Shown here: in pieces, positions 1 through 42,333 of the stretch | How positions within the stretch are numbered: position 1 is the stretch's first letter | How the letters are laid out: each line of letters starts with the position of its first letter | Source: Macrostomum lignano | Taxonomy: Eukaryota | Length of the DNA stretch: 46,145 nucleotides | Direction of reading: 5' to 3' | NCBI GenBank assembly: GCA_002269645.1 | Contig: NIVC01001080.1 | Coordinates: forward strand, 1 to 46,145 | Program-made: the position numbers and the translations under genes | The notes under the pieces: generated by a model | What the model was told of the DNA's origin: nothing | Database searches by the model: none | What the model saw: the letters and a program-made list of their open reading frames with translations, nothing else

Positions 1-325
1 AGTTGTGTGTACTGGCTCTCCACGTTTAACTTTCCTACGGCATTCACTACAAGCCTTTAGCTTCAATTTATTACATTTTTATTACAAGCGCAAAAACCTT
101 GTCTATAACGCTATCGTTTTGTAGGTCTTTGATAAAATGTCTTCTGGTCTTATTACAGATGATAGTAAGGAACTAGAAAAGTTGAGGTGGAGCTCAGAAC
201 CTCAAAAAGCTACATGTAGTCTAATTTTTTACGGACCAATCAGTGCAACCCAATTGCAATGCTCCCGTTTATAAACCAATGCCTCAGCTCAAGACAAAAA
301 AATCTCTCCAAGTGAACACCTTGTC

Positions 326-853
326 ATGGACAAACTAGGCAACAACCTGACGTCAACCGGCGGAGATGAGGCGGTCCAGGTGTTCAGCCAGACTCTTATT
401 TCTGCTTTGGAAATCTGCTGGACTGGCGGGGACTCCGCTTCCCGCCGCCTCCTGTGCGCTCTGGCCTCAGTACTCGGCATTCTTTCGGGCATCCGACACT
501 CGTTGTCGTGCTGATTGGAGCGCCCGGCAACGCCCTGTCTGCCTGGCTGCTGCTCCGTCGAGCTCGCGCCAAGGAGCGCCGGACGCGCCAGAGCGTCTAC
601 CTGGGCGCCGCGTCGGCCGCGAACTGCGGCGCGGTGCTGAGCTACGGGCTGCTACAGTTCTTCCTGCCCTACGGCCTGCCGTGGCTCAGCGGCGGCTCAG
701 CCGGTCTGATTATCGGCGACGTGTCCGATGCTGCCTGTCGGACAGTCAGCTTCCTGATGGCCTGGCTGATCCTGCTGGCATATGGGCTGCTCACCGCAAT
801 GGCGTGCGACAGAGCGTTGGCCATGTGGCGCCCGTTCCGCAGTCAGCGGCTCG
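326..853 (+). CDS. Rhodopsin-like (class A) orphan GPCR, paralogue A, exon 1 (N-terminus, TM1-TM3); 1-bp frameshift at 493-494
   Basis: ATG326 MDKLGNNLTS (N-glycosylation sequon) runs to ...LGILSGI, then one C is missing relative to paralogue B, then PTLVVVLIGAPGN (TM1 GN motif) ... ACRTV (TM3 Cys) ... MACDRALA (DRY-like). Donor G|GTAATG at 853/854, phase 1. Confidence 0.8.
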
Positions 854-929
854 GTAATGACGCTTGGGAAACTGCTCCAGCTGAGCTATGTGGTTCTTTA
901 GAATGGGTTGCTCGGGATAAGTGCTGTGT

Positions 930-1264
930 ACTTGGTTCTAAATGAGTTTAATTGGTCCTTCATGCTGTTTACCTGGTCCTTCATGTTGTTTACTTGGTCC
1001 TTCATGTTGTTTACTTGGCTCTACATGAGTTTACTTGGTTCTACATGAGTTTATTTGGTTCTACATGAGTTTACTTGGCTCTACATGAGTTTACTTGGTC
1101 TTTCATGTTGTTTACTTGGCTCTACATGAGTTTACTTGGTCTTTCATGTTGTTTACTTGGTCCTTCATGTTGTTTACTTGGCTCTACATGAGTTTACTTG
1201 GCTCTACATGAGTTTACTTGGCTCTATATGAGTTTACTTGGTTCTAAATGAGTTTACTTGGTCC
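930..1264. repeat. 20-21 bp minisatellite (TTTACTTGGCTCTACATGAG / TTTACTTGGTCCTTCATGTTG) in the GPCR A intron
   Basis: About 16 interspersed variant units read directly. Confidence 0.9.
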
Positions 1265-2101
1265 TATTGTTTGACAACTCAGCCATTGGGTTATGAAGTT
1301 ATGAAGCTTGCGTGATGTGTCAGGGACTTAAGCAAACGTTTGAGCAAACGGAAACAGCTCATTCAAATTCTTTTTTGGCGGAGGGCTGGAATCGATTGAG
1401 ACTGTCAGAACTGTCAGACTGTCAGAATGTCAAACATGGGTAAAAAGGCGCTTTTGATTCTCTTTCAACTGAATCTGTCCACTACAGAAACTTTATGCAT
1501 TCAAACTGCAGACTATAAATTAATTTCAAAGGCTGCCGTCACTGTTAATCAGTTTACAGCTGTTCCATCGAAATCAAATCCTCGGAGACATACTGTATAT
1601 GTGATTGAATACAATGATTCGAGAGAATACAGTCATCAGGTTCCGCCGTCATTATTGGACTTTAGTTGTCCATGGTTCCAGTCCAGTTTTAGGTCTTTTT
1701 TCCTGAGGCGTTTGAACTTTAACTGTATACTGTGAAAGCTACCATCGAATTTTATGCGTCTACAAATCCGTATATTGGAGAGTTTCAGAGCACCTACGCA
1801 GACAATATGTTGGTTCGGGAAGTTGTTATGCAGGAAGTTTTTGATCTGCAAACAGACTTTATTGGCTTCGGCATCATTTTACAGAAAAACGGTCTAAAAT
1901 GTAAATTATGTTTTCATTTTTACGAAAATTGACTGTCAGACATTTGACTGTCACAATTTGGCTGCACAAGTTCAAAATTAGTCAAAACATCGGCAGTCAA
2001 ATAGCTGATAAAGATGTATCCCTTGTTTCTGGAGTTCCTTTTGAAGAATAAAAAATCAGAAAATGCCGCTTAAAAAGTGTCATTGAATGCTCACCTACCA
2101 G

Positions 2102-2723
2102 GTCGCGGATCGGCCATCCAAGTGAGCTCGTTGATCTCCCTGGCAACCGGAATCGTGGCCAGCTACGCCCTCGCTGTGACTCGCTGGACCAGTAGCAAGG
2201 CGACATCCTGCTCAAAGAATCCGTTCGAATCAGCTGTCCCAGCCGGCTTCAATGTCTTCTATGGCATCTGGCTCGGCTTCCACCGGCGCTGCTGGTGCTG
2301 AGCATATTGGCCGCCAACGCCACCCTCCTGGCTCGAGTAGTGCGGGTTCGCCGGATTCGCCAGCAGCTGGTGGCCACAAATCGGCCGGGTCAACAGAGTC
2401 AGGCGCGTTGCCGAGTCAGGATGCTGGGCGACAGCAGCATCCGGAGCAGCATGCTCTGTCTGGCCGTCTCTAGTGCCTCGCTGGCCACATCGCTACCGTG
2501 CGTCGCTATGACAACGCTGGCCTACTCACTCAGCCTGTGGCCCAGCGCGGACCCGACTCTGCTGCCTGCCGTTCTGCTGCTCTGCCACATCAGCGAGCTG
2601 CTGGTTGTGTTCCAGCTGTCAATCAGCTGGATGCTGCTGGCCTGGCGAAGCTCCGAGTTCAGCCGTCGGCTGCTTCGATGCCTGAAATGCCAGGTGCCAG
2701 CCGGAGCCGGAGCTAGTGCTTAG
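2102..2723 (+). CDS. GPCR paralogue A, exon 2 (TM4-TM7, C-tail); 1-bp frameshift at 2280-2281
   Basis: Acceptor CCTACCAG|GT at 2101/2102 matches phase 1 (G|GT = Gly). Aligns to paralogue B exon 2 (TRW, GF/YPP, ANxxLL, LSISWLLLAWRS.EF) once one C is restored at TTCC(C)ACCG. Stop TAG 2721-2723. Either a pseudogene or an assembly error. Confidence 0.8.
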
Positions 2724-2999
2724 AGCGTCGGACTCATAAATGAAAGGTCGGAGGTTCGATTCTAAACCCATATGAACAATCTGTGTCCTGAAGCATTGAT
2801 TCAGTTCACCCAGCTGTAAAGTGGGTGCCAGCATTAGCTGGGATAATTGAGGGTGTGTGTGGCGAACCCCCCCCCCAGTGCTTGGACTGAACAGCCGTAT
2901 GCAGCCTTCAGATGAGCCCGCGCGAAATAGCTGCGGCTGAGCTGTCGGTTGCACATCTGCCCGTTAAGGCAGGTGTAATCAATTATTATATTATTATTG
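2711..2999 (+). mobile_element. tRNA-derived SINE, family 1, copy A
   Basis: A-box-like CTAGTG..TTAGAGCG, B-box GGTTCGATTC, body CAGTTCACCCAGCTGTAAA.TGGG, (ATT)n tail. Homologous along its length to copies at 37.3, 40.7 and 44.0 kb. Confidence 0.9.
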
Positions 3000-4319
3000 A
3001 AAAGTGAGAAAAGCCCATGAAGAACAGTTTATACTGCTTAATACAGTTGGATGAGCAAATAAACAAAACCTTTTTAAAGAGCCCGCGTGAAACTAACTTT
3101 CTGCTGCCCATTAGCGCAACGTATTCAAACATCTTAGTCTCAAACTATCCTATGCGTTCGATATAGCTGGTCGATAGTTCGTACGCAATGCACAGTCTAA
3201 TGTACAGCCAACTCTAATTCGTATCTCGTATAGAAAAAATCGTCCTCGACTGGAAAGGATTGTGGATAGTCTATGGCCAGCCCTGCTGACCACGCCGAAT
3301 AAGAACGGATTTTATTAACTTCAGCGATCAATTTAAGAGTGATCAAATTCTTTCAAGTTAATGAATTAATGGATAAATGATTCACAGTAAAATGAAAATT
3401 GGCGACTACTGATAGCTAAAGTTTATTGTAGCAATTAAAATACTACAAATACTACAATTTTTCGTCACAGAAGAAACTTATGAAGCTTACTAAATAAACA
3501 AATAACATTGAGAGCGTCAGTCAGAAAATATTCAATTGTAAGTTTATGAAATATATGTTTCACTTTCCTCCAAGAAAAGACGACGAACACGCGAGATTCA
3601 AAAGCTTAAAAAGTAAGCGTCGGGAAAAGTACATTATTCTTATTATTTACGCAAAAGATAACTTGACGGCATACACTAGTATAGAAATGAAATCATAAAT
3701 TTGACTATACTACTCTCAAAAGAAGTAGTATTAACCGTTTTGAACTTTCCACCTAATTGGTTTATTTATTGAAACAGGCACACCGAGTAAGCAGGACCTT
3801 CTTATTGCCTTCGTCACTGTACGATCTTACCATCACTATTGTTGTACACTATGAATGAGAGAGTTTTTGAGTATCTACAACTGGCAGACGGACACACTAT
3901 GCTAGATTAGAGCAAACCAGCTCTTGACTTCTACCAGCTATAGAACTATCGACTTCAGTTTTCAATTAAGGATTAGAAACAAGTTCCATAGTAATGTGCT
4001 TTTCTTGCATTCCCTCACTTTCCCCACGCCTTCGCGACCCCACTGAGGGCTGCTACTGTTGGTTTAGCAACCAGGTGTCTACCTAGTCTCCCGGATAACG
4101 CGTTTTTATAGTCTTTCAATACAATATTATCTGCAGTAATGTACTACGTAGACTACGTAGTTACTACGTTCGCACTTTAGGCGACTATTGTCGCACAACC
4201 GGTGAGAGGCATTACTGACCATTCCGCCGACTCCCCTGAGCAGGCACACAAGCGCGCGGATACGTACGCAGTCATACGCACAGGCACACCCTCACACAGG
4301 AGTGTACAGCGGCCCTAAC

Positions 4320-4495
4320 TTTATTTATCGTTAGGCATGTACACCTCACTGTGCCTTGGGGTCGGCCCTCAAGGGCGTTAATTGAATGAGCAGAGCCAAG
4401 CCGAGGTTTCAATTTAGCCCCAAATTAATGTGACTGCACTGGGAATCGAGCCTGGGCTCCTGGCACATCAGATCGCACCACTGGGCTGTGGCCCT
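4320..4495 (-). mobile_element. Probable tRNA-derived SINE of a second family
   Basis: Minus strand begins GGCCACAGCCCAGTGG (A-box-like) and has GGCTCGATTCC (B-box), ending in an A-rich AACGATAAATAAAG. Single copy in the window. Confidence 0.4.
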
Positions 4496-4607
4496 CCCTC
4501 AGGTTAGGTTGGGTATCAAGCTCTCCACTCCAACTCAGTCTCAGGCGTCAAGCAAGCTACCTAAAATACATGTATGCAAAATTTATCAACCTGCTGCTCA
4601 TAGCAAG

Positions 4608-5259
4608 AGTATTGGTTTTGTCAGCCTAACTGAGAATAAAGCCATCCAAAGTGAGAATCCTGCCTACGCTAACTGCGAAGGGCCTGGCTGCGTGCAGCCT
4701 TAGTCTATGGGCCATAGACTATAAAGGACAAGCAAAGTGATAAAAAGCCATCCAATGTGAGAATCGATTGGTCTATGCGTCGTATTCTTTTATTTTTATA
4801 CCTTCTGAGCCATATGACTAGCCAATAGCTTGAACGGAATAACGGAAACAGGAACACACTGGATGATACAGTACAGTAAAGTAAAGAGTTAAAATAGCCG
4901 TCCCTCAATGCACTGCCCAAAGAGTCGTCTGCAATGCAGGTCCCATGCGGCAGCCTTCCCAGCAGTGACTGTGTCGTCAATCGCTTCGCGCGCCTCCCTC
5001 TCTAACAGCATGTTCCTGTTTCCGTTATTCCGTTCAAGCTATTGGCTAGTCATATGGCTCAGAAGGTATAAAAATAAAAGAATACGACGCATAGACCAAT
5101 CGATTCTCACATTGGATGGCTTTTTATCACTTTGCTTGTCCTTTATAGTCTATGGCCCATAGACTAAGGCTGCACGCAGCCAGGCCCTTCGCAGTCAGCG
5201 TAGGCAGGATTCTCACTTTGGATGGCTTTATTCTCAGTTAGGCTGACAAAAGCAATACT
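4608..5259. mobile_element. Foldback/MITE-like element: 249-bp inverted repeats (4608-4856 and 5011-5259) with a 154-bp spacer
   Basis: Arms are reverse complements with two mismatches seen. Each arm contains TAGTCTATGG-N-CCATAGACTA and a repeated AAAGCCATCCAA.GTGAGAATC motif. No clear TSD found. Confidence 0.75.
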
Positions 5260-5610
5260 ACAAAAGTGTAATATACTCAAGTGAAGCCATCAAGGCATGT
5301 ATATAATTCTGTTGTAGCACAGCACGACTTAAGGGATTATTGTACAGTGAAAGTGACGTTGTGCGCAAAAAACCGATGCATAGCTAAGGCCGGCTAGTCA
5401 ACCCTACAAGTCAACCTCACTACCAACCAATCCGAACCTCAAGACGAGTTCCAGCGAATCACAGAGCGACGGCTAACTCTGAAAGGGAACAAGGCCAAAT
5501 GAACTCAAGCTTGTAAACATATCAACGTTTGAAGGCTGCGTAAATGAGTATAGTATGGGAGAAGGCTGGGGCAGAAGCGCTATACTACCGTCCAACAGAC
5601 CAATCTGCTA

Positions 5611-6275
5611 TCAATCTAGCGACTTCTCCACAGCTGAGTTTCTTGTCGCTGTATCACCACCGCCACTTCCTCCGCTGCTGACGGAGACGTCCTGACCACG
5701 GCGATGCAGCAAACAGGCCGTCAAATCTCGTTGGAACTCCCGACTGCGCCAGGCCAGCAGCAGCCAGCTGATTGACAGGTCGAAGACAATGAGCAGCTCG
5801 GTGATGTGGCACACCATGATTACAGTTTCAAGCAGGGCGAGGTTCGACTCGGGGCTGACAGTGTACGTCATGACTGCGGTGGTCAGACAGGGCGCCGAGC
5901 TGATCAAGAGGGCGCAGGACATCGCTAGACAGACGGTGCAGCTGCGAACGGCGCTGTCAGCTGCTCCAGCCGCTGCAGCCTTGACCTGCGCCTGCATCAG
6001 CTCCTGTCGGCGTCGGCGGATGCGCACTACTCGAACCAGGAGGGCAGAGTTCGCCACCAGCATGGCCAGTATGAGTAGCACTGGCGGGTAGCCAAGCCCG
6101 ATGTCGTAGAGGATGTTGAAACTGCTCATCCCGGAGTCTGAGCTAGCGTACTTGGCGCAGGACATCGACCCAGTGACCGGGTTGGCGATCCAACGGGTCG
6201 CGGCGAACAGATAAGCGGCCGTGGCAACGGTTGCTAGGCAGACCAGCCCGCAGACTTTGTAGGCCACGCTGCTGT
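5611..6275 (-). CDS. Rhodopsin-like orphan GPCR, paralogue B, exon 2 (TM4-TM7, C-tail)
   Basis: Acceptor ATATTCAG|AC at 6276/6275 gives G|AC = Asp with exon 1 (phase 1). Open frame with four hydrophobic segments, an ECL2 Cys (SCAKY) and a basic ICL3 (RVVRIRRRR). TGA at 5613-5611. Confidence 0.88.
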
Positions 6276-6610
6276 CTGAATATGGGGTGCGAGGATCGAA
6301 TTAGTGGAACCCGACCCACCCGTATTACTGCTTGACGTATGCATAACATACCCATTTGACTAAATGTTCAACCTGGAAGACAGAATACAAAACCAGATCA
6401 CCAAGTGTTTAGCATGAAGGCCAAAGGTCAAGCCAAAAGATGATTAGAAGTTATTAGGGCCGCTGTCAACCCTGTGTGAGCGTGTGTATGAGTGCGTGCC
6501 TGAGTACAGTATTGGCGCGCTTGTAAGTGCTCAGGAGTCAGCGGAATGGGCGGATGCTGGCGCCCGCAGCCCTCCTACATGATGCCCGAAAGATTCCCAT
6601 GCGTCATTAC

Positions 6611-7205
6611 CGAGCCGCTGACTGCGGAACGGACGCCACATGGCCAACGCTCTGTCGCACGCCATTGCGGTGAGCAGCCCATATGCCAGCAGGATCAGCC
6701 AGGCCATCAGGAAGCTGACTGTCCGACAGGCAGCATCGGACACGTCGCCGATAATCAGACCGGCTGAGCCGCCGCTGAGCCACGGCAGGCCGTAGGGCAG
6801 GAAGAACTGCAGCAGCCCGTAGCTCAGCACCGCGCCGCAGTTCGCGGCCGACGCGGCGCCCAGGTAGACGCTCTGGCGCGTCCGGCGCTCCTTGGCGCGA
6901 GCTCGACGGAGCAGCAGCCAGGCAGACAGGGCGTTGCCGGGCGCTCCAATCAGCACGACAACGAGCGTCGGGATGCCCGAAAGAATGCCGAGTACTGAGG
7001 CCAGAGCGCACAGGAGGCGATTCCAGTCGGCGTTATCTGGAGTGCCGCAATGGCTGTGAATGTTAAACAAATTCCGGCCATTTTCATTGACTAGCGTTGA
7101 GTTTCCTCTGGCCCTAGCAACTGTAGCTAGAGCTGTCAGACGGTGAATCGAAAACGCGGAATTTTTCGTCAGTTCGAACAGAAATTTGGCGCTTTGCAGG
7201 CTCAT
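6611..7205 (-). CDS. GPCR paralogue B, exon 1 (TM1-TM3); start uncertain
   Basis: GIPTLVVVLIGAPGN...MACDRALA in an intact frame; donor G|GTAATG at 6611/6610. Candidate ATG at 7205 (the extension includes the sequon NST). Alternatively an upstream exon could splice to TTCACAG near 7052. Confidence 0.8.
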
Positions 7206-7600
7206 ATGCGTTGCTAACTGGACCAAAGTTTTTTTCAACTGAAGTTCTTGAATTTTTTACGGGTTAATGAGATATTTTATAAAAAAACACGTTGAAGCAG
7301 TGTTTCACTTCAAGTAAGTAATTGGGAAAATATTTATTGCGCATGGCTGGCACAGGCATGTATGGGATAGTGACACCTGCAGTTGACAGCTTTCACATGG
7401 AGCTATTCTTAAACTTTGTCAGTTGATAACGAACTTGGTTTAACCCTGACTTAGGGCGACAAATTGGTAAAAATTTACCCAAGGACAACCCAAAAAGTCG
7501 GGCTCTTAGCGTTCGATTCTTTGCTAACATCACTACTCAGAGTACGACGTAAAAAGACCCTGAAAGAATAAAAGAGTGTACAAGATGGATTCATTTTTCA

Positions 7601-9389
7601 AAGATAGTGTCCCATTCCTGAAGATGGTGTCTCATTCCTGAAGATGGTGTCTCATTCCTGAAGATGGTGTCTCATTCCTGAAGATGGTCTCCTATTCCTG
7701 AAGATGGTGTCTCATTCCTGAAGATGGTGTCTCATTCCTGAAGATGGTGTCTCATTACTGAAGATGGTGTCTCATTCCTGAAGATGGTCTCCTATTCCTG
7801 ATGATGGTGTCTCATTCCTGAAGATGGTCTCCTATTCCTGAAGATGGTGTCTCATTCCTGAAGATGGTCTCCTATTCCTGAAGATGGTGTCTCATTACTG
7901 AAGATGGTGTCTCATTCCTGAAGATGGTGTCTCATTCCTGAAGATGGTGTCTCATTCCTGAAGATGGTGTCTCATTCCTGAAGATGGTCTCCTATTTCTG
8001 AAGATGGTGTCTCATTCCTGAAGATGGTCTCCTATTCCTGATGATGGTGTCTCATTCCTGAAGATGGTCTCCTATTCCTGAAGATGGTGTCTCATTCCTG
8101 AAGATGGTCTCCTATTCCTGAAGATGGTGTCTCATTACTGAAGATGGTGTCTCATTCCTGAAGATGGTGTCTCATTCCTGAAGATGGTGTCTCATTCCTG
8201 AAGATGGTGTCTCATTCCTGAAGATGGTCTCCTATTTCTGAAGATGGTGTCTCATTCCTGAAGATGGTGTCTCATTCCTGAAGATGGTGTCTCATTCCTG
8301 ATGATGGTGTCTCATTCCTGAAGATGGTGTCTCATTCCTGAAGATGGTCTCCTATTCCTGAAGATGGTGTCTCATTCCTGAAGATGGTGTCTCATTCCTG
8401 AAGATGGTGTCTCATTACTGAAGATGGTGTCTCATTCCTGAAGATGGTGTCTCATTCCTGAAGATGGTCTCCTATTCCTGAAGATGGTGTCTCATTCCTG
8501 AAGATGGTGTCTCATTCCTGAAGATGGTCTCCTATTCCTGAAGATGGTGTCTCATTCCTGAAGATGGTCTCCTATTCCTGAAGATGGTGTCTCATTCCTG
8601 AAGATGGTCTCCTATTCCTGAAGATGGTGTCTCATTCCTGAAGATGGTGTCTCATTACTGAAGATGGTGTCTCATTCCTGAAGATGGTCTCCTATTCCTG
8701 ATGATGGTGTCTCATTCCTGAAGATGGTCTCCTATTCCTGAAGATGGTGTCTCATTCCTGAAGATGGTCTCCTATTCCTGATGATGGTGTCTCATTCCTG
8801 AAGATGGTCTCCTATTCCTGAAGATGGTGTCTCATTCCTGAAGATGGTCTCCTATTCCTGAAGATGGTGTCTCATTACTGAAGATGGTGTCTCATTCCTG
8901 AAGATGGTCTCCTATTCCTGATGATGGTGTCTCATTCCTGAAGATGGTGTCTCATTCCTGAAGATGGTGTCTCATTCCTGAAGATGGTGTCTCATTCCTG
9001 AAGATGGTGTCTCATTCCTGAAGATGGTGTCTCATTCCTGAAGATGGTGTCTCATTCCTGAAGATGGTGTCTCATTCCTGAAGATGGTCTCCTATTACTG
9101 AAGATGGTGTCTCATTCCTGAAGATGGTCTCCTATTCCTGATGATGGTGTCTCATTCCTGAAGATGGTGTCTCATTCCTGAAGATGGTGTCTCATTCCTG
9201 AAGATGGTGTCTCATTCCTGAAGATGGTGTCTCATTCCTGAAGATGGTCTCCTATTCCTGATGATGGTGTCTCATTCCTGAAGATGGTGTCTCATTCCTG
9301 AAGATGGTGTCTCATTCCTGAAGATGGTGTCTCATTCCTGAAGATGGTGTCTCATTACTGAAGATGGTGTCTCATTCCTGAAGATGGTG
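7601..9389. repeat. 20-bp minisatellite (AAGATGGTGTCTCATTCCTG), about 89 units
   Basis: Constant 20-bp period with recurring variants (GGTCTCCTATT, CATTACTG, ATGATGG). Confidence 0.98.
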
Positions 9390-9815
9390 CTGTAGTTACA
9401 GATGCAGTTACAGATTGCAGATGCGGTTACATTCTGAAGATAACCCTGTAATGCCTTTAATTTAATGATGCTGAAAAATGTGCTCTATAAAAATCCTTAG
9501 AACATATTTGCTACTGTATTTAAACTAAATCAGGCGATTAATTAGCCAATAATTTTGATTCTGCAAAAGCTCGTTTACTGTGAGGCTTGCAGATGACATA
9601 TATAGAGAGAGATTTCGAGAGAAAAAGCGAGGCACAAAAACAGTACAGCAGATCGACTGATCATTGCAGCGAGATTATCCGCTTAGTGTACTGGATTTCA
9701 GACACAGAAGAGGAGAGAATCGCCCACTCTCCTCACGGCGAGGCCCAGCTAGAAAAATGCCTTACTACAGGCGATTTTTTCAACTATCTGCCCGTTGCCT
9801 CAAAGTGCTATGGGA

Positions 9816-9818
<3 letters not shown>

Positions 9819-9860
<42 letters not shown>
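9819..9860. repeat. (GA)n microsatellite
   Basis: Direct read. Confidence 0.95.
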
Positions 9861-9863
<3 letters not shown>

Positions 9864-10320
9864 CGATAGAGGGTAGGCTGCTTGGGTAGGAAATTACGGG
9901 GAAACGAACGATTTTTGGGGACCAGAAACGGAGCTGGAGAGCGAGAAGCGGTGAAGGCTGAGGTACTCGCGTCCCAGCAGAACTGGTGAGAAAGTACAGG
10001 AGTGCAGCATCAGACACTTGCGATGGGGTTTGCGCGCCTGGCCAGTATTTTCTGCCTTGGATTGGCATTGATTGGCTGGGCGTGGACGTACTGGAGGCGT
10101 CAGGCAGAGGGCAGAGGGGCAGAGGGCAGAGGGTGAAGCCAGGAGATGCACATGCGGCCAACTCCCCAGAATTATTGAAATTGTCCAACTCTCTTAGAGC
10201 TGCATGGGGAAAGACACTGAGAGAGAATTTCTAATGATGATCTGGGATTTATCAGTATTTCATTGCTTTGTATTTTGGTAGTTTAGGTAGAAAATGCCTG
10301 CGTTTAATATTCACGCCGAG

Positions 10321-10387
10321 ATGAATTCATCTGGATTCAAGATCGTGATGACGCTGTTCGTGTTGCTTCACACGGCCTCCTGTCAAG
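10321..10387 (+). CDS. Quiver/Sleepless-like Ly6/uPAR protein, exon 1 (signal peptide)
   Basis: MNSSGFKIVMTLFVLLHTASCQ hydrophobic leader; donor CAAG|GTGAGA at 10387/10388, phase 1, matching exon 2. An alternative in-frame ATG lies at 10294. Confidence 0.75.
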
Positions 10388-10589
10388 GTGAGATAGCAAC
10401 TTACACTACATGTCTGCAGTTTCTATATTCTCTAATTATGAATATGACTAAAAACGTGCAGATGTGTCAAGCCTCTTGGGTGTAGGGGTTCGCAATGTCT
10501 GTTGGTCGGGAAAATTCGAATTACAGCCAGTGGACTCTGACGCAGCCAGAAGGGAGTGTCAATAGTCTCAGGAATTAGTTAGCCTTGGT

Positions 10590-10915
10590 ATTTACTTACT
10601 TGACTCAGCTGTAGGGGATTCCAGGCATCCGGGTGCAGTGGGGAGGCGTTGCCGCCCATTCCTCTAGCCCCTAGCGACCACGGGCAGCGCGGTCCCCCTC
10701 CAGAGAATCCAGGAGGTGGATAGTCGCTCGCCCGGTAGCCCTTAGTTAGCGGACGAGCTGGCAGAGATTCTCGGGCACGAAAACGTTGGAAATGTTCGGG
10801 TTTGGACTGAGGTCTGTCCAGAGTAAAGGCGGGGCAGTCACAGATGAAGTGCTCCGCATTCTCGACACCGGAGAGGCAGAATGGGCATTCCTCGATACCG
10901 ATTTTTACCCTGGAA
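10590..10915 (-). mobile_element. 5'-truncated non-LTR retrotransposon (LINE) 3' fragment inside the Quiver-like intron
   Basis: Minus-strand translation [29 protein letters not shown] fits the C-x2-C...E-x2-EH-x4-CP zinc knuckle at the end of LINE ORF2, followed by a UTR-like stretch and an AGTCAAGTAAGTAAA short-repeat tail. Confidence 0.65.
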
Positions 10916-11118
10916 GTGACGATGTCTGGTAAAACAGCCATGTCCCGAGAGGGCCATGGTGACCACCCCGATGTCCCTGCGGTTGAGTCCAAGCAGGTCC
11001 CTGTGGAGGGCGGGGGTTGGCCCTGGTCCCGATTTGCGTCAGTACCAAGACTACAGCATACCACAGAACATTTCCGACACTCACAGTTGAAACCGTCGCG
11101 CCCCAACCCCATGCGCAG

Positions 11119-11555
11119 TTTTCCCCTCGGACTCGGCCGGCGGCATCAGCTGCTTCCAGTGCCACTCGGTGAACAACTCGGACCCCACGTGTCACGACCC
11201 GTTCAACTCGGCTCTGCACCCAATAAAGACCAGCATCTGCTCCGAGGGCCGGCGCGATCACCGAGGCAAGTTTCCTGGCCGGTACTGCTTCAAGATAAAA
11301 GGCAGACGAGCCTCCGACGGAGTGGAAATCGTTGTTAGACGCTGCAGCGTTGACACATTGGTTGACAACACGTTGAAGAGTCACTACGGCCACTTCAAGA
11401 TCGTCTCCGGCAACACTACGGAGCAGTTCTTCGGCACCGTGTCGATGTGCCGCTTTGACGGATGCAACGCAGCATCGGCGCTGAGCTCAACCATCTGGCT
11501 AACCCTTGGTGTTGCCCTATCACTGCTCCTACGTGCAACTGGTTGCGGCTTCTAG
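11119..11555 (+). CDS. Quiver/Sleepless-like Ly6/uPAR (three-finger) protein, exon 2; predicted GPI-anchored, about 167 aa in total
   Basis: Acceptor GCGCAG|TT, phase 1. ISCFQCHSVNNSDPTCHDPF (Quiver-type N-terminal motif), YCFKI, VRRC, CRFDGCN (terminal CN), small-residue omega region AASALSS and a hydrophobic tail. TAG at 11553-11555. Confidence 0.88.
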
Positions 11556-37610: not shown

Positions 37611-38036
37611 CATATTCATGTTAAATTTCAGGTATGCTATTAAGGGCACCGTGCTAGGGGAAGGGCTAGGGGAATCATTTAGGGCAGTTGTGAAATTAAT
37701 TTTCCCAGTCCAGGCGGTTGCTAGGAGAGCGTCACGGAAAAGACAGGCGTTGGCTAAAGTAATAATTTATATAATAATAATAATAATTAAATAATTAAAT
37801 AATAATCTACTCATCTTTCTCCTATTTAAAGGACAGGGACAGGGAGAGAGGTTAAGGACAGTCAGACTGTTGCGAGCTTGTGGCAAAAGCACCTTCATTT
37901 TTCAGCGCTCTTATGGCACTAAAAATGCCACTCTGATACGTTAACCCCAGATAGCTTAGTCATTTTATAGGAATTAAGTACTACGGCATGCAAAAGCAAG
38001 TAACGACCTCCAAATATTACTTTGCGTCTTCTCTAG

Positions 38037-38267
38037 CCCGGACAGTGTCCGAAGAAAACCGGACGATTTGTCCGGCCTACGCCAGTCCATCACCCTGGCC
38101 AGGGAGATTCAAAACGAGACGAAATACCTGGGCGAGCAGGTGGTTATCTACTGCGACATTGTGGGTACACCGGTGCCAAACTACCAGTGGTACAAGGACG
38201 GCGCGCCATTGCCTGACGGAGGCGCTGATCGTCGGATCCGCGCCGAGGTCACTCTGTACGGGGCAGT
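38037..38267 (+). CDS. ROR: ROR exon 2 (Ig domain, first half)
   Basis: Acceptor CTTCTCTAG|; IQNETKYLGEQVVIYCDIVGTPVPNYQWYKDG (Ig Cys and Trp); donor GT|GTGAGT, phase 2. Confidence 0.9.
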
Positions 38268-38324
38268 GTGAGTTGCTTCTGCCCTGGCTTGGATTTAAAA
38301 TCAATCTTGGACTCTTCACTCTGA

Positions 38325-38450
38325 TACCTCCTCTCTCGGATCCTTCTCTCTGATGACCCACTCTCAGATCCTTCTCTCTGATGCCCTACACTCGGATCCT
38401 TCTCTCTGATCCCCACTCAGAGGATCCTCAGATGCTTGCCTGTAAGGAGC
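38325..38450. repeat. ~28-bp tandem repeat (CTCTCGGATCCTTCTCTCTGATG...), 3-4 degenerate units in ROR intron 2
   Basis: Direct read. Confidence 0.7.
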
Positions 38451-38539
38451 ATCCCGACTGTCAGTTCATAAGTGCATGCTCACTTCTTTTCTCAAAGCAC
38501 CTCGGTGACAGCTGTTCCGACATCGCTCCCAAATTGCAG

Positions 38540-38856
38540 GCTGAGGATCCGGCAGCTCAGAGTGGCGGACTCGGGCAGCTATCGCTGCTTGGGCTCAAAC
38601 CCAGCCGGCCGAGTCGACACCACCGGGTTTCTGATTGTCTACCCAACCAGGCGACCCTCGCGTAAGGACGGCAAAGATAAGCCGGATGCACCGTCTGACG
38701 TTGGAGGCGAGGGCGCCAAAGGAGACTCAGGAGCGGTGCAGACCGGCTTCTGCCAGCGCTTCAAACCGAACGTCTGCAGAGGATTTCTGGGCGGGCGAGA
38801 CGTCTTTGTACGGTCGAATATGTTCCAGTTTAACAAGGAGGCCGAACTGCTGCACC
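38540..38856 (+). CDS. ROR: ROR exon 3 (Ig second half, start of Frizzled CRD)
   Basis: Acceptor TTGCAG|G; LRIRQLRVADSGSYRC (D-x-G-x-Y-x-C) and GFCQRFKPNVC (CRD C1, C2); donor C|GTGAGT, phase 1. Confidence 0.92.
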
Positions 38857-39034
38857 GTGAGTTGTCTGGCCGTTGCTTGTTACAGCTGCTATTTGACAGA
38901 GAATGTCAACTTCTCAAAACCACCCTCAAACTGAACGGAATCTGAACTGGACTGTTCGACTCTCAAAATTGAGGCATCTAACAAACCAACGTCTTCTGAC
39001 CTTAAAAGAGGAAAAGAGAAAGAGGAAAAGTAGC

Positions 39035-39092
39035 CCTGTGCAATCCTGTGCAATCCTGTGCAATCCTGTGCAATCCTGTGCAATCCTGTGCA
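39035..39092. repeat. 10-bp tandem repeat (CCTGTGCAAT) x6
   Basis: Direct read. Confidence 0.9.
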
Positions 39093-39373
39093 ATGATACT
39101 GCGAACAACCAACTCCATTGCAGAGCCTTAATTTAGGACATGATGAAGTTCCGAAATTCCTCAAATTCATTCCCAGGGGCTACAAAGACAGGGGTCACAT
39201 GGGATGCTTTGGGCTCCGTTGTTTTGACCTCGTGCTCCATTTCAATGCCTGAAAAATAATGGCGCTCTGAAGCACCATTCAGAGCGTGAAAAATAAATAA
39301 AAACTACCTGAGAGTTAAATACGACCCAGAAGGTTATCCACATCTCTCCATCGTCTTTTCACGCGCACCGCAG

Positions 39374-39625
39374 TGCTACAACGAATGGCGGACATAGTGA
39401 ACGACACCCAGTGCACCCAGCCCGTCATGGAGACCCTGTGCCGATACAATTTTCCCGAGTGCCATCGACCGGTTTCCCCTGATGGCGCCGAGATTTTGGC
39501 GCCAATACCACGGCGCCTGTGCCGAACCGACTGCGAGAAAGTGACTCAGCACTGGTGCCGTGAGAACTTCGAGAAACTGCGAGCGAGCTTTAGCTACTAC
39601 CAGGAGAACACCCACTCAGACATTG
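39374..39625 (+). CDS. ROR: ROR exon 4 (Frizzled CRD core)
   Basis: Acceptor CGCAG|TG; CTQPVMETLCRYNFPEC...RLCRTDCE...WC (CRD C3-C8); donor G|GTAAGA, phase 1. Confidence 0.93.
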
Positions 39626-39702
39626 GTAAGAAATTTTCTAGCACAGAAGGAGTGCATTGTAGTCTTCTTTGAATTTGACTGCTCAACCTGCTCTCATTGC
39701 AG

Positions 39703-40185
39703 ACTATCTGGGGCTGCTGCCCAACTGTGCTGCGCTGCCCGCCGAGACCACTCTGTGCGTCAGTCTGGCGCCGGAGCTGCAGTCGACGACTTCGCCGCCT
39801 CAGCTGCCTCAAACGTCAACACGCAGCAGGCCAGCTGTCCAAGACTGCTATAACGCCAGCGATGCCACGGGCTATCGTGGACCGGCCGCGCGTAGTCGCT
39901 CCGGTCGCGTCTGCCTACCGTGGAGCCTCGTGCCCGGCTACGGAGCCCTTGGCGACCACAACCAGTGCCGCAGCCTGCCCGTTGCTGGCCCGTCTCTGGG
40001 GGTCGCCGGGTCCGCGGCAACTCCGCCGCCACCGCCGCCGCCCTGGTGCTTCGTGTCCGGCGCGGGCGAATGGGAGGACTGCGGCCTGCCGCCCTGCTCG
40101 CAGCCGCCGCAGCCTCCACCGGCGCGACCAGTTTTCCCCAATACGCCTCCTCTGGTGAAGTCGCCGCCGAAGCGAGCTGGTGGCG
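39703..40185 (+). CDS. ROR: ROR exon 5 (end of CRD, Kringle domain)
   Basis: Acceptor ATTGCAG|AC; LPNC...LC (CRD C9, C10); Kringle CYN...GYRG...SGRVCLPW...NQCR...PWCF...WEDCGLPPC; donor G|GTAAGT, phase 1. Confidence 0.93.
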
Positions 40186-40354
40186 GTAAGTTTGAACTCT
40201 ACATGGTGCACTGCAATTCACATTTAGCATGGACACCGTTGACGTGTTTACAATTGAAAGAAAATTATTTGTTCCTCCATTCAAGGCCACGCCATTGCTG
40301 ATGGAAACCGCAAAGTTGGAGACGAAGGAGACAGTGAAAAAATAGTCGTGTCAG

Positions 40355-40628
40355 TCAAGGAAATTCTACCTGTCGTGATTTCCCTGGCCGTCCTCTTACT
40401 CGTTGCCATCGTTCTAACCATAGTCTTCTGCGTTTATCGACGCTCAGCCAAGGCAGCCGCCGCTGCCGACGCGGCAGCAGCCGCAGCCGCCGACGATCCG
40501 TGCGGGCTGGCCAGCGGCAAGGCAATGCGGCTGGCGGCCACCAAGAAGTCCGTCTCGGACGTCAGACTGGATCTGCAGTGCACAACGCCGTTGCTCACGG
40601 CGCAGGAGTTTCCCATTACTCAGATTCG
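40355..40628 (+). CDS. ROR: ROR exon 6 (transmembrane helix, juxtamembrane region)
   Basis: ILPVVISLAVLLLVAIVLTIVFCVYRR; acceptor at 40354/40355 (an in-phase alternative exists at 40345/40346); donor CG|GTGAGA, phase 2. Confidence 0.88.
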
Positions 40629-40664
40629 GTGAGAAAAGCTTGACCGAAAACCCAGACTCATTTT

Positions 40665-40933
40665 AATGATGATAATTGATTAAACCTGCCTTAATGGCCA
40701 GATGTGCAACCGACAGCTCAGCCGCAGCTATTGCGCGGCGCACCTGAAAGCTGCGTACGGCTGTTCTGTCCAAGGACTGGGGGGGGGGGGTGTCGCCACA
40801 CAGCCTCAATTACCCTACCCATTTTACAGCTGGGTGAACTGAAGCAATACAGAGTTAAGTGTCTTGCTCAAGGAGAATCGAACCCCGACATTTCAGTCGC
40901 CCTCCGACTCTCTAACCACTGGGCTACAATCCC
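40665..40933 (-). mobile_element. tRNA-derived SINE, family 1, copy C (ROR intron 6), internally deleted
   Basis: Same body as copies A, B and D; AATCGAACC is the reverse complement of the B-box; head GGGATTGTAGCCCAGTGG. Confidence 0.88.
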
Positions 40934-41162
40934 AGTTGTAGGATTTTTATTGAAGACTCAATTTGACCCTTATAGTGCTTGCTACGAACTGAATGCCATG
41001 GAAACATCCTGTAAGCTTGCCGTACAAGCCAATGTAGAACGTAGACGTCCCCTCTCGGGAAGTACATGCAGCGAGAATCTCAGAGCTCTAGGAACCAAAA
41101 TTCTATTGCATCCAAATCCCAATGCAGATTTAATTATTCCAAAACTTCTCTCCCACTTTCAG

Positions 41163-42333
41163 ATTCGGAGAACTTCTCGGCGAGTCAGCGTTCGGTCGCG
41201 TCTACAAAGGTGAACTGATAGGCGTCTACAGCGAGACGTCTCTGACACCGGTGGCCATCAAGTGCTTGAACGGCAGTGCAGATGCGGCCCTGAAGGAGGA
41301 ATTCTCCCAGGAGCTTCAGCAGCTGGCCGGCCTGTCCCATCCCAATCTGCTGCGACTTCTGGGCGTGTCGCTGCGCCAGAGCCCCTGCTGCCTGGCCATG
41401 GAGCTGCCTCCGCACGGCGACCTTCACGAGTTCCTGGCCTACAGAAGTCCTCGAAGCGAACACAGCGGCGACTATCACGATCCCCTGAGCCAGGCTCAGA
41501 TGTTCCACATGGCCACTCAGGTGGCCTCCGCTGTGGAATACCTGACCCTGAGGTGCCTCGTCCATCGGGACATCGCGGCAAGAAATATTCAGCTGGGCGA
41601 CAAGCTGGAGTGCAAACTGAGCGACCTGGGCCAGTGCCGCGACATCTACGCGCCTGACTACTACCTGCTACGGCCGGGCAGCCGCCTGCCCATCCGCTGG
41701 ATGCCGCCCGAGGCCACGCTCTACGGCCAGTTCTCAACCCACAGCGATGCCTACAGCTTCGGGGTGCTGCTGTGGGAGATCTGGTCCTACGGCCTGCAGC
41801 CCTACTACGGCTATTCGAATAGTGACGTCATTGAGCTGGTGCGCAAGCGCCAGCTATTGGCCTGCCCGCCGGACTGCCCACCCAGGCTGTACAGCCTCAT
41901 GCTAGAGTGCTGGACCCAGCCGATGGTACATCGAGTGTCGGCCACTGAGATCTGCAATCGATTGAGACAGCTTCAAGCGGAGGTTCTGGTCGAACTGTCG
42001 ACTTCATCTCAGGGCTCGTCGGGCAACACCAACTCGACTGCGTTCAGCGGCGAACGGCCGATGGGGCAGCTGGCTCAGCCGGCCTCTCAGCGAGTCATTC
42101 CGGTGCCAGTGCCGCAGTTGAGTCCCCCAGGGTCCAGCGCGGGATCCGCGGCTCGACAACGGCGTACAGCAGCGGCGGCGGAAGCAGCTCAATGGTGCAG
42201 AGCTACCAGCTGCACGGACCGCCTCAGAGGCAGCCACTGGGACTGCGGCAGAACTTCCACTCCACCATGGCTGTCTGAACCGAACGGATTGCCGGCAATC
42301 AAAGTGCTGGATTTCCCCCCCCCCCCCGACTGA
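41163..42333 (+). CDS. ROR: ROR exon 7 (tyrosine kinase domain and S/P-rich tail); tail probably frameshifted at ~42151, true stop possibly 42278
   Basis: Acceptor ACTTTCAG|A, phase 2; LGESAFGRVYKG, VAIK, HRDIAARN, DLG (ROR-type replacement of DFG), IYAPDYY (YxxDYY loop), LPIRWMPPE, SDAYSFGVLLWE. Confidence 0.95.

What the first reader, a model, noticed from the sequence alone, without database searches (positions are those of the whole stretch)
446..870. Near-identical ~425-bp tract shared by two otherwise diverged, oppositely oriented GPCR paralogues
Seen: 446-870 (+) equals 7019-6594 (-) apart from four substitutions (three synonymous at 498, 654 and 831; one intronic at 864) and one 1-bp indel. 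The tract covers TM1-TM3 and 17 nt of intron. The N-termini and the rest of the introns (1248 vs 335 bp) are unrelated, and exon 2 proteins share only blocks such as TRW and LSISWLLLAWRS. Inference: recent gene conversion between inverted paralogues has homogenised the TM1-3 half while TM4-7 stay distinct, a way of making chimeric receptors.
Basis: partly seen in the sequence, partly recalled or inferred. Interest (0 to 1): 0.7.

Follow-up and report, generated by a model that had tools for sequence, protein, structure and literature searches.

The report
Gene conversion between two flatworm receptor genes
Two neighbouring, oppositely oriented orphan receptor genes of the flatworm Macrostomum lignano share a 428-bp nearly identical stretch because one copy was pasted over the other by gene conversion, which is a well-known and ordinary process.

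Summary
Window 446-873 (+) matches 7019-6591 (-) with 5 substitutions and one 1-bp indel, inside two tail-to-tail rhodopsin-type GPCR genes: A (326..2723, +) and B (7205..5611, -). Synonymous divergence is 0.027 in the tract and about 1.0 in exon 2. A third paralogue, C, shows that TM1-3 is not intrinsically conserved. Interlocus gene conversion is the best explanation.

- The indel lies in coding sequence and frameshifts gene A. A second 1-bp deletion at 2280-2281 does the same.
- The window is contig NIVC01001080.1 of the M. lignano Mlig_3_7 assembly. A near-identical contig, NIVC01000376.1, has both bases present, so A is intact there (383 aa). The frameshifts are most likely consensus errors.
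- A diverged homeologous locus, NIVC01000384.1, carries B' with the same tract. B therefore owned the tract before the loci split.

B is strongly constrained (dN/dS 0.07) and A is relaxed (0.78). This favours B as donor and A as recipient. The event dates to about the homeologue split or later, but this is only weakly resolved. This is a new example of a known kind (compare CCR2/CCR5) and of low interest.

The parts
446..873 (+). Arm 1 of the conversion tract, in gene A. It holds codons 41-176 (TM1, ICL1, TM2, ECL1, TM3, start of ICL2) plus the first 20 nt of the intron.
6591..7019 (-). Arm 2 of the conversion tract, in gene B. It holds codons 63-198 plus the first 20 nt of the intron.
326..853 (+). 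Gene A exon 1. The A-specific N-terminus is 326-445. A 1-bp deletion at the CC run 493-494 breaks the frame in this contig only.
854..2101 (+). Gene A intron (1248 nt, GT..AG). It contains a 20-nt minisatellite at 929-1266.
2102..2723 (+). Gene A exon 2 (TM4-TM7 and tail). A second 1-bp deletion at the CC run 2280-2281 occurs in this contig only. The last three codons and the stop come from a SINE-like repeat.
6611..7205 (-). Gene B exon 1. The B-specific N-terminus of 62 codons is 7205-7020.
6276..6610 (-). Gene B intron (335 nt). The homeologue B' has 2557 nt here.
5611..6275 (-). Gene B exon 2 (TM4-TM7 and tail). The whole gene is intact at 419 aa.

Best explanation
A and B are an old adjacent inverted (tail-to-tail) pair of platyhelminth-type orphan rhodopsin-like GPCR genes in Macrostomum lignano. 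A 428-bp segment was copied non-reciprocally from one gene onto the positionally homologous segment of the other by interlocus gene conversion, that is, homology-guided repair of a break using the inverted paralogue 5.7 kb away. The segment runs from the first codon of TM1 to 20 nt past the exon 1 splice donor. The rest of the genes kept their ancient divergence. What is shown: the tract, its sharp limits, the dS contrast, the in-frame homologous replacement, and the presence of the same tract in B' of a diverged homeologous locus. What is inferred: B is the donor and A the recipient; the last exchange dates to about the homeologue split or later; the two frameshifts of A in this contig are consensus errors of a redundant contig. 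It is not resolved whether there was one event or repeated homogenisation.
For: The tract is 99% identical over 428 nt, with dS 0.027 and dN 0. Exon 2 has dS of about 1.0 and dN 0.48, and the N-termini are unalignable. Identity extends into the intron, so protein-level selection cannot explain it. Paralogue C (L001 5906..4357) is 53% identical to A and B in TM1-3, with dS 1.3. TM1-3 is therefore not a frozen region, and about 55 amino-acid differences would be expected where none is seen. The conserved Cys lies exactly 10 codons before the tract start in A, B and C, and the junction is in frame, so this is a homologous replacement and not a random insertion. Copy-specific differences recur in a second contig, where A is intact. 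The homeologous locus L002 has B' with B-type flanks and the same tract. In the tract, A-B differ at 5 sites, B-B' at 9 and A-B' at 8. B-B' has dN/dS of 0.07 and A-A' has 0.78. All three proteins pass the Pfam 7tm_1 gathering score. Precedent for mosaic conversion in GPCR pairs and in adjacent inverted paralogues is in PMC2720389 and PMC3966223.
Against: No reads were available, and all three contigs come from one PacBio data set and one assembler. The flanking divergence (about 60% nt identity in exon 2) is too high for canonical homologous invasion, so the pre-event state of TM1-3 must have been more similar, or the mechanism was atypical. There is no clear GC-biased-conversion signature: GC3 is 0.81 in the tract, 0.75-0.77 in exon 2 and 0.79 in C's TM1-3. 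The test of paralogues being closer than homeologues is only weakly significant (Poisson p 0.045-0.13). A' exon 1 could not be retrieved, so neither direction nor date is proven.
Confidence: 0.85

Rival explanations
1. Long-term concerted evolution. Exon 1 TM1-3 has been re-homogenised repeatedly since the old duplication, possibly kept by selection for a shared module such as a dimer interface, rather than being overwritten once.
For: Homology-dependent conversion between sequences as diverged as exon 2 (about 60% nt) is hard to start. This is easier to explain if the tract never diverged (inference; PMC3966223). B' already had the tract before the homeologue split. Mosaic, boundary-conserved conversion is described for CCR2/CCR5 and EMR2/CD97 (PMC2720389).
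Against: Both limits are abrupt, with no gradient of older, longer tracts. GC3 is not clearly raised. A is under relaxed constraint, which argues against selection for a shared module.
Confidence: 0.35
2. Assembly artefact. One of the two arms is a mis-assembled or mis-polished copy of the other.
For: Mlig_3_7 is highly redundant (180 Mb in blocks at least 95% identical) and was polished with short reads. This contig carries 1-bp consensus-type errors.
Against: The two arms keep the same five copy-specific differences in two contigs. The sister contig keeps A's own base at 498, only 4 nt from the restored C, so its A sequence was not overwritten with B's. A diverged homeologous contig shows the tract in the same B context. 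Polishing cannot rewrite 428 nt of about 40% divergence. The junction is in frame at homologous codons.
Confidence: 0.03
3. Non-homologous partial duplication or template switching. A 428-bp piece of one gene was copied into the other by replication-based or end-joining repair rather than by homologous conversion.
For: The limits are abrupt and the flanks are unalignable. A 13-nt copy of tract positions 36-48 sits directly after the tract in B's intron, and 0 of 20000 random 30-mers match the tract that well.
Against: The replacement is codon-exact and positionally homologous at both ends. In B' the 13-mer is imperfect (ACTTTCAGGCATC), and its first base in B is a derived substitution, so the footprint largely dissolves. 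B-type flanks plus the tract predate the homeologue split.
Confidence: 0.08
4. Gene A in this contig is a real, very recent pseudogene with two genuine 1-bp deletions, so the converted copy is dead.
For: There are two frameshifts in 1.15 kb. dN/dS of A against A' is 0.78. A's C-terminal tail is replaced by a SINE-like repeat. The window and NIVC01000376.1 differ by 2 true-looking SNVs, so they may be distinct genomic copies.
Against: Window and sister contig differ by 7 one-base indels, nearly all in short runs, but only 2 SNVs in about 12 kb of unique sequence. That ratio is typical of long-read consensus error and not of mutation. No stop codon occurs in either corrected frame. A and A' are intact at both sites in the other contigs.
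Confidence: 0.2

Closest known systems
Mosaic interlocus gene conversion in mammalian GPCR pairs (CCR2/CCR5; EMR2/CD97/EMR3), as summarised in PMC2720389
   Same: Neighbouring GPCR paralogues have one part of the coding region homogenised by conversion while other parts stay diverged. The limits are sharp, giving a chimeric (mosaic) gene.
   Different: This case is in a flatworm orphan receptor family and the pair is inverted tail-to-tail. The diverged part is far older (dS about 1). One partner shows relaxed constraint. No evidence exists yet that the mosaic is maintained across species or serves dimerisation.
Gene conversion between adjacent inverted paralogues in Caenorhabditis (hsp16 modules, hsp70-7/hsp70-8; review PMC3966223)
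   Same: Close inverted duplicates a few hundred bp to a few kb apart exchange short tracts. Conversion depends on local identity rather than average identity.
   Different: Those pairs are similar over their whole length. Here only 428 bp of a gene pair of about 1.2-kb coding length is shared.
[quoted passage not shown]
   Same: Both are platyhelminth-restricted, highly diverged rhodopsin-like receptors with degenerate TM2, TM3 and TM7 motifs. The nearest non-Macrostomum relatives here are cestode and trematode hypothetical GPCRs.
   Different: PROF1 genes are described as intronless, whereas A and B have an intron after TM3 and C has one after TM1. The TM7 motif here is S/N-W-x-L-L rather than N/D-F-x-x-Y/F. 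No phylogeny was done, so the genes are not filed as PROF1.

Membership tests
Interlocus (non-allelic) gene conversion tract | A segment of two paralogues with much lower divergence than its flanks, including at synonymous sites | tested here: met
   dS is 0.027 in the tract and about 1.0 in exon 2. The permutation maximum is 63 nt against 409 nt observed.
Interlocus (non-allelic) gene conversion tract | Identity not explained by protein-level constraint (it extends into non-coding sequence, and an outgroup paralogue is diverged there) | tested here: met
   Identity covers 17-20 nt of shared intron. Paralogue C is 53% identical at the amino-acid level with dS 1.3 in TM1-3.
Interlocus (non-allelic) gene conversion tract | Tree discordance: paralogues within a locus are closer than each is to its own homeologue or orthologue in the tract, but not outside it | tested here: inconclusive
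   In the tract, A-B differ at 5 sites, B-B' at 9 and A-B' at 8 of 428. In exon 2, B-B' is 98.3% identical and A-B about 60%. The direction fits, but Poisson p is only 0.045-0.13. A' exon 1 was not retrievable.
Interlocus (non-allelic) gene conversion tract | Non-reciprocal transfer with an identifiable donor and recipient | tested here: inconclusive
   B' carries the tract with B-type flanks, and B is constrained while A is relaxed. This favours B to A but does not prove it.
Interlocus (non-allelic) gene conversion tract | Both copies physically present on single molecules (not an assembly artefact) | not testable with these tools
   There was no read access. Indirect support comes from three contigs of GCA_002269645.1.
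Rhodopsin-like GPCR (Pfam 7tm_1) | Profile match above the curated threshold | tested here: met
   B scores 40.8 bits, A (intact version) 31.8 and C 31.4, against a cut-off of 30.5.
Rhodopsin-like GPCR (Pfam 7tm_1) | Seven transmembrane segments and class A landmark motifs (N in TM1, DRY, NPxxY) | tested here: inconclusive
   Hydropathy peaks fall at about six distinct positions in A and B and about five in C, with TM2 below threshold in A and B. The GN motif in TM1 and DR-A/V at the end of TM3 are present. TM7 has SWxLL or NWLLL instead of NPxxY.
PROF1 (platyhelminth rhodopsin-like orphan family 1) | Intronless genes | tested here: not met
   A and B have an intron after TM3, and C has one after TM1 (definition from PMC3261222).
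PROF1 (platyhelminth rhodopsin-like orphan family 1) | Family motifs in TM2, TM3 and TM7, and phylogenetic placement | tested here: inconclusive
   TM2 is ISAAN in C and ASAAN in A and B, and DRV in C fits PROF1-II. DRA and the TM7 S/N-W-x-L-L motif do not fit. No tree was built.
Pseudogene (gene A of this contig) | Reading-frame disruptions that are real in the genome | tested here: inconclusive
   The window has two 1-bp deletions. Both are absent from NIVC01000376.1, and the exon 2 one is also absent from NIVC01000384.1. The 7:2 ratio of indels to SNVs points to consensus error.

The most novel reading that the evidence does not exclude
The 428-bp inverted repeat may be more than a fossil of one conversion. 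It could be a maintained recombination substrate. Crossing-over between the arms would flip the 5.7-kb spacer and swap the two exon 2 halves (TM4-7) between the two promoters and N-termini. Alternatively, the shared TM1-3 module could be kept identical by selection, for example for heteromer formation. Read-through across the convergent pair could also yield a 428-bp hairpin RNA.
Probability: 0.05. Interest if true: 0.55.

Novelty: new member of a known kind. Interest (0 to 1): 0.22.

Why it matters
This is a clean, small example of mosaic gene conversion in a lineage-specific flatworm receptor family. It sits in a neopolyploid genome whose redundancy allows paralogue-versus-homeologue comparisons. 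In practice it warns annotators of M. lignano about three things. Contig NIVC01001080.1 is a near-duplicate of part of NIVC01000376.1 and carries 1-bp consensus errors that break a gene. Genes B and C do not appear among the called genes of the stretches fetched. Exon-wise trees of this family will be discordant. It does not open a new mechanism.

Tried and rejected
- Protein-level constraint as the cause of identity: rejected by dS, the shared intron bases and outgroup C.
- Chance: rejected.
- GC-biased conversion signature: not seen.
- Templated-insertion footprint, the 13-mer TCTTTCGGGCATC directly after the tract in B: striking in the window alone, but imperfect in the homeologue and partly created by a derived substitution. 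It was set aside.
- Homology searches of the word-indexed protein collection with B and with P0001 gave nothing beyond P0001 itself. No orthologue from another species was found, so no exon-wise species trees could be built.
- A' exon 1 of the homeologous locus lies about 1.3-2 kb beyond the 10-kb flank limit. No annotated gene allowed walking to it.
- Other copies of the tract in the window, L001 or L002: none besides A, B and B'.
- Spacer inversion between contigs: none, as all three are collinear.
- tRNA and Rfam scans of the region: no hits.
- PROF1 membership: not supported.

Full report
**Observation**

The repeat finder reports inverted arms at 493-873/6591-6971 (381 nt, 99%) and 446-494/6971-7019 (49 nt, 100%). 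A global alignment gives substitutions at 498, 654, 831 and 864, and a 1-bp indel at the C run 493-494. Beyond both ends similarity collapses at once. A word-7 BLASTN of the two gene regions finds only two further pieces of homology, both in exon 2: 68 nt at 88% and 126 nt at 71%. Shuffling the difference pattern 20000 times never gave a run longer than 63 nt with at most 3 differences, against 409 nt observed.

**Gene models**

- B (minus strand) is intact: ATG 7205, exon 1 to 6611, GT..AG intron of 335 nt, exon 2 6275-5611, 419 aa. It matches Pfam 7tm_1 at 40.8 bits against a cut-off of 30.5.
- A (plus strand): ATG 326, exon 1 to 853, intron of 1248 nt, exon 2 2102-2723.
- As assembled here, A needs two frame corrections. 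The other is CC at 2280-2281 in TM5. With both restored the ORF is clean at 383 aa.
- The genes are convergent (tail-to-tail), with 2.9 kb between their stops.
- The tract covers codons 41-176 of A and 63-198 of B. This is TM1 with its GN motif, ICL1, TM2, ECL1 with GLPWLSGG, TM3 with DRA, and the start of ICL2, followed by the first bases of the intron.

**Divergence**

| Region | Comparison | dS | dN | Other |
|---|---|---|---|---|
| Tract (136 codons) | A-B | 0.027 | 0 | |
| Exon 2 (186 codons) | A-B | about 1.0 | 0.48 | 47% aa identity |
| N-termini | A-B | | | unalignable |

These values are Nei-Gojobori estimates.

**Source**

An exhaustive profile search returned a 198-aa protein that is gene A exon 1 read through into the intron, without the frameshift. 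It is PAA84399.1, BOX15_Mlig016690g1, from Macrostomum lignano. Its locus L001 (NIVC01000376.1, assembly Mlig_3_7, GCA_002269645.1) is collinear with window 1-10897 at 99.7%.

A look-up of the neighbouring sleepless/QVR gene showed that the window itself is contig NIVC01001080.1 (46,145 bp) of the same assembly. L003 equals window 294-21555 exactly.

The window and NIVC01000376.1 differ by the following in about 12 kb of unique sequence, plus tandem-array differences:
- seven 1-bp indels, nearly all in short runs;
- only two SNVs.

Mlig_3_7 is a Canu assembly of PacBio reads polished with Pilon. It is stated to hold 180 Mb of duplicated blocks at least 95% identical (PMC5730564). An indel-to-SNV ratio of 7:2 is what consensus error looks like, not mutation.

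In the sister contig both C runs are CCC while A's own base at 498 is kept, so its A sequence was not overwritten with B's. I therefore read the two frameshifts of A as contig-specific errors, with probability about 0.8. In any case an intact A exists in the genome.

**Outgroup**

L001 also contains a third paralogue, C (L001 5906..4357, minus strand, head-to-head with A, just outside the window). It is 407 aa, scores 31.4 bits on 7tm_1, and has its intron after TM1 instead of after TM3.

| Region | Comparison | aa identity | dS | dN |
|---|---|---|---|---|
| TM1-3 | A/B vs C | 53% | 1.3 | 0.41 |
| Exon 2 | A-C | 40% | | 0.60 |
| Exon 2 | B-C | 39% | | 0.62 |
| Exon 2 | A-B | 47% | | 0.48 |

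TM1-3 is therefore not unusually conserved in this family. By scaling, A and B should differ at roughly 55 of the 136 residues where they differ at none.

A conserved Cys lies exactly 10 codons upstream of the first tract codon in A, B and C. The 5' limit thus falls inside positionally homologous but diverged sequence, and the replacement is codon-exact. This is the signature of homology-guided conversion rather than of a random insertion.

**Homeologous locus**

L002 (NIVC01000384.1:557240-578364) is a diverged copy of the locus. Intergenic identity is about 91%, B's 3' flank 96.6% and B exon 2 98.3%. It holds:
- A' exon 2 from codon 206 onward; the fetched stretch ends there, so A' exon 1 was out of reach;
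- a complete, intact B' (419 aa) with an intron of 2557 nt.

B' has B-type N-terminus and intron flanks and the same tract. Three-way comparison over 428 nt gives:
- six sites where A=B but B' differs;
- two sites where A alone differs (498, 654);
- three sites where B alone differs (831, 864, 871).

The pairwise distances are therefore A-B 5, B-B' 9 and A-B' 8.

Two conclusions follow. First, the tract really ends at 873, because the T that B carries at the site aligned to 871 is derived. Second, B already owned this tract when the two loci split.

If the last A/B exchange were older than the split, A-B should be at least as distant as B-B'. It is smaller, but only weakly so (Poisson p 0.045-0.13). 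If the exchange is younger than the split, B must be the donor and A the recipient.

**Constraint**

| Comparison | dS | dN |
|---|---|---|
| B-B' exon 2 | 0.054 | 0.004 |
| B-B' tract | 0.036 | 0.007 |
| B-B' N-terminus | 0.073 | 0.073 |
| A-A' exon 2 (178 codons) | 0.050 | 0.039 |

The nonsynonymous/synonymous counts are 15/7 for A and 2/9 for B (Fisher p=0.010). B is a strongly constrained gene. A is relaxed or rapidly evolving.

A's last three codons and stop come from a SINE-like repeat (2713-3002) that is also present in A', so it predates the split. Together with the previous paragraph, this makes B to A the more likely direction. It also leaves open whether the chimeric A is a working receptor.

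The GenBank model of A is an RNA-seq-derived transcript whose ORF runs from exon 1 into the intron. This shows transcription but not correct splicing. B and C do not appear among the called genes of the stretches fetched.

**Mechanism**

The best-supported account is interlocus gene conversion between adjacent inverted paralogues.

One difficulty remains. With about 60% nucleotide identity in the unconverted halves, ordinary strand invasion would be inefficient. So either TM1-3 was still much more similar before the last event (repeated homogenisation), or the event used very short homologies.

A possible repair footprint was examined. A 13-nt copy of tract positions 36-48 sits directly after the tract in B's intron, and none of 20000 random 30-mers matched the tract that well. 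It loses most of its force because B' has ACTTTCAGGCATC there, and the first base of the 13-mer is a derived change in B.

No elevated GC3 marks the tract. No spacer inversion is seen among the three contigs.

**Comparison with known cases**

- Mosaic conversion that homogenises part of neighbouring GPCR genes while the rest diverges is documented for CCR2/CCR5 and EMR2/CD97 (PMC2720389).
- Conversion between adjacent inverted paralogues is documented in Caenorhabditis (PMC3966223).
- The receptors themselves have their nearest non-Macrostomum relatives in cestode and trematode hypothetical GPCRs. They recall the PROF1 family (PMC3261222). However, they have introns and a different TM7 motif, so I do not file them there.

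**Verdict**

It is an ordinary member of a known kind. The finding is now placed in its genomic context: three copies of the locus in a redundant neopolyploid assembly.

Noticed in passing
window 1-46145: The window is the whole contig NIVC01001080.1 of Macrostomum lignano Mlig_3_7. At least its first 13.4 kb duplicates part of NIVC01000376.1 at about 99.6%. The differences are mostly 1-bp indels (window 39, 206, 493-494, 913, 2280-2281, 11863, 12031), two SNVs (11186, 12655) and tandem-array length. It looks like a redundant or haplotype contig with residual consensus errors.
   Followed up: yes
L001 4357-5906 (minus strand; about 3.8 kb upstream of window position 1): A third paralogue, C, of the same GPCR family lies head-to-head with A. 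It is 407 aa, has its intron after TM1 instead of after TM3, and does not appear among the called genes of the locus.
   Followed up: yes
window 2713-3002 (+); also 37599-37296, 44361-44056, 40848-40664 (-): A SINE-like repeat of about 290 bp has a tRNA-like head (ARAGORN and Rfam give no hit). The copy at 2713 supplies the last three codons and the stop of gene A. It is also present in the homeologue A'.
   Followed up: partly
window 4611-5256: A foldback element has 254-nt arms (4608-4861/5006-5259, 98%) and a 144-nt loop, flanked by a TA duplication. It is absent from the homeologous locus (empty site AGAGTA|CTAAAA in L002 near 2402). It resembles a Tc1/mariner-type MITE inserted after the loci split.
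   Followed up: partly
window 7601-9389 and 929-1266: A minisatellite with a 20/40-nt unit (about 45 copies of 40 nt) lies 400 bp upstream of gene B. A different 20-nt minisatellite lies inside gene A's intron. The first differs by one unit and by unit variants between the two near-identical contigs.
   Followed up: partly
window 6276-6610 versus L002 3421-5977: Gene B's intron is 335 nt here but 2557 nt in the homeologue B', an insertion or deletion of about 2.2 kb.
   Followed up: no
window about 10319-11555 (+): A Ly6/sleepless (QVR, PF17064) gene lies here (PAA72553.1; PAA84400.1 in the sister contig). Its homeologue PAA84270.1 served as the handle to reach the third copy of the locus.
   Followed up: partly
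window about 38000-42333 (+): A multi-exon receptor tyrosine kinase gene is present. PK_Tyr_Ser-Thr scores 227 bits on 41251-42333, and there are weak Ig-like and kringle-like matches upstream. It looks ROR-like. No frameshift was noticed in the exons read.
   Followed up: partly
window 10579-11112 (-): An ORF contains [27 protein letters not shown]. The same motif sits inside the 2481-aa fused M. lignano gene model A0A1I8HJ75 (P0002). It is probably a piece of a repeated element.
   Followed up: no
window 12900-36400 (many places): A very high density of micro- and minisatellite arrays is present (GTCT-type arrays at about 13.0-13.5, 23.6-24.7 and 34.1-34.6 kb; arrays at 14.8-15.6, 16.4-17.0, 19.1-20.3, 21.8-22.8 and 31.4-32.9 kb). 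These produce long spurious ORFs.
   Followed up: no
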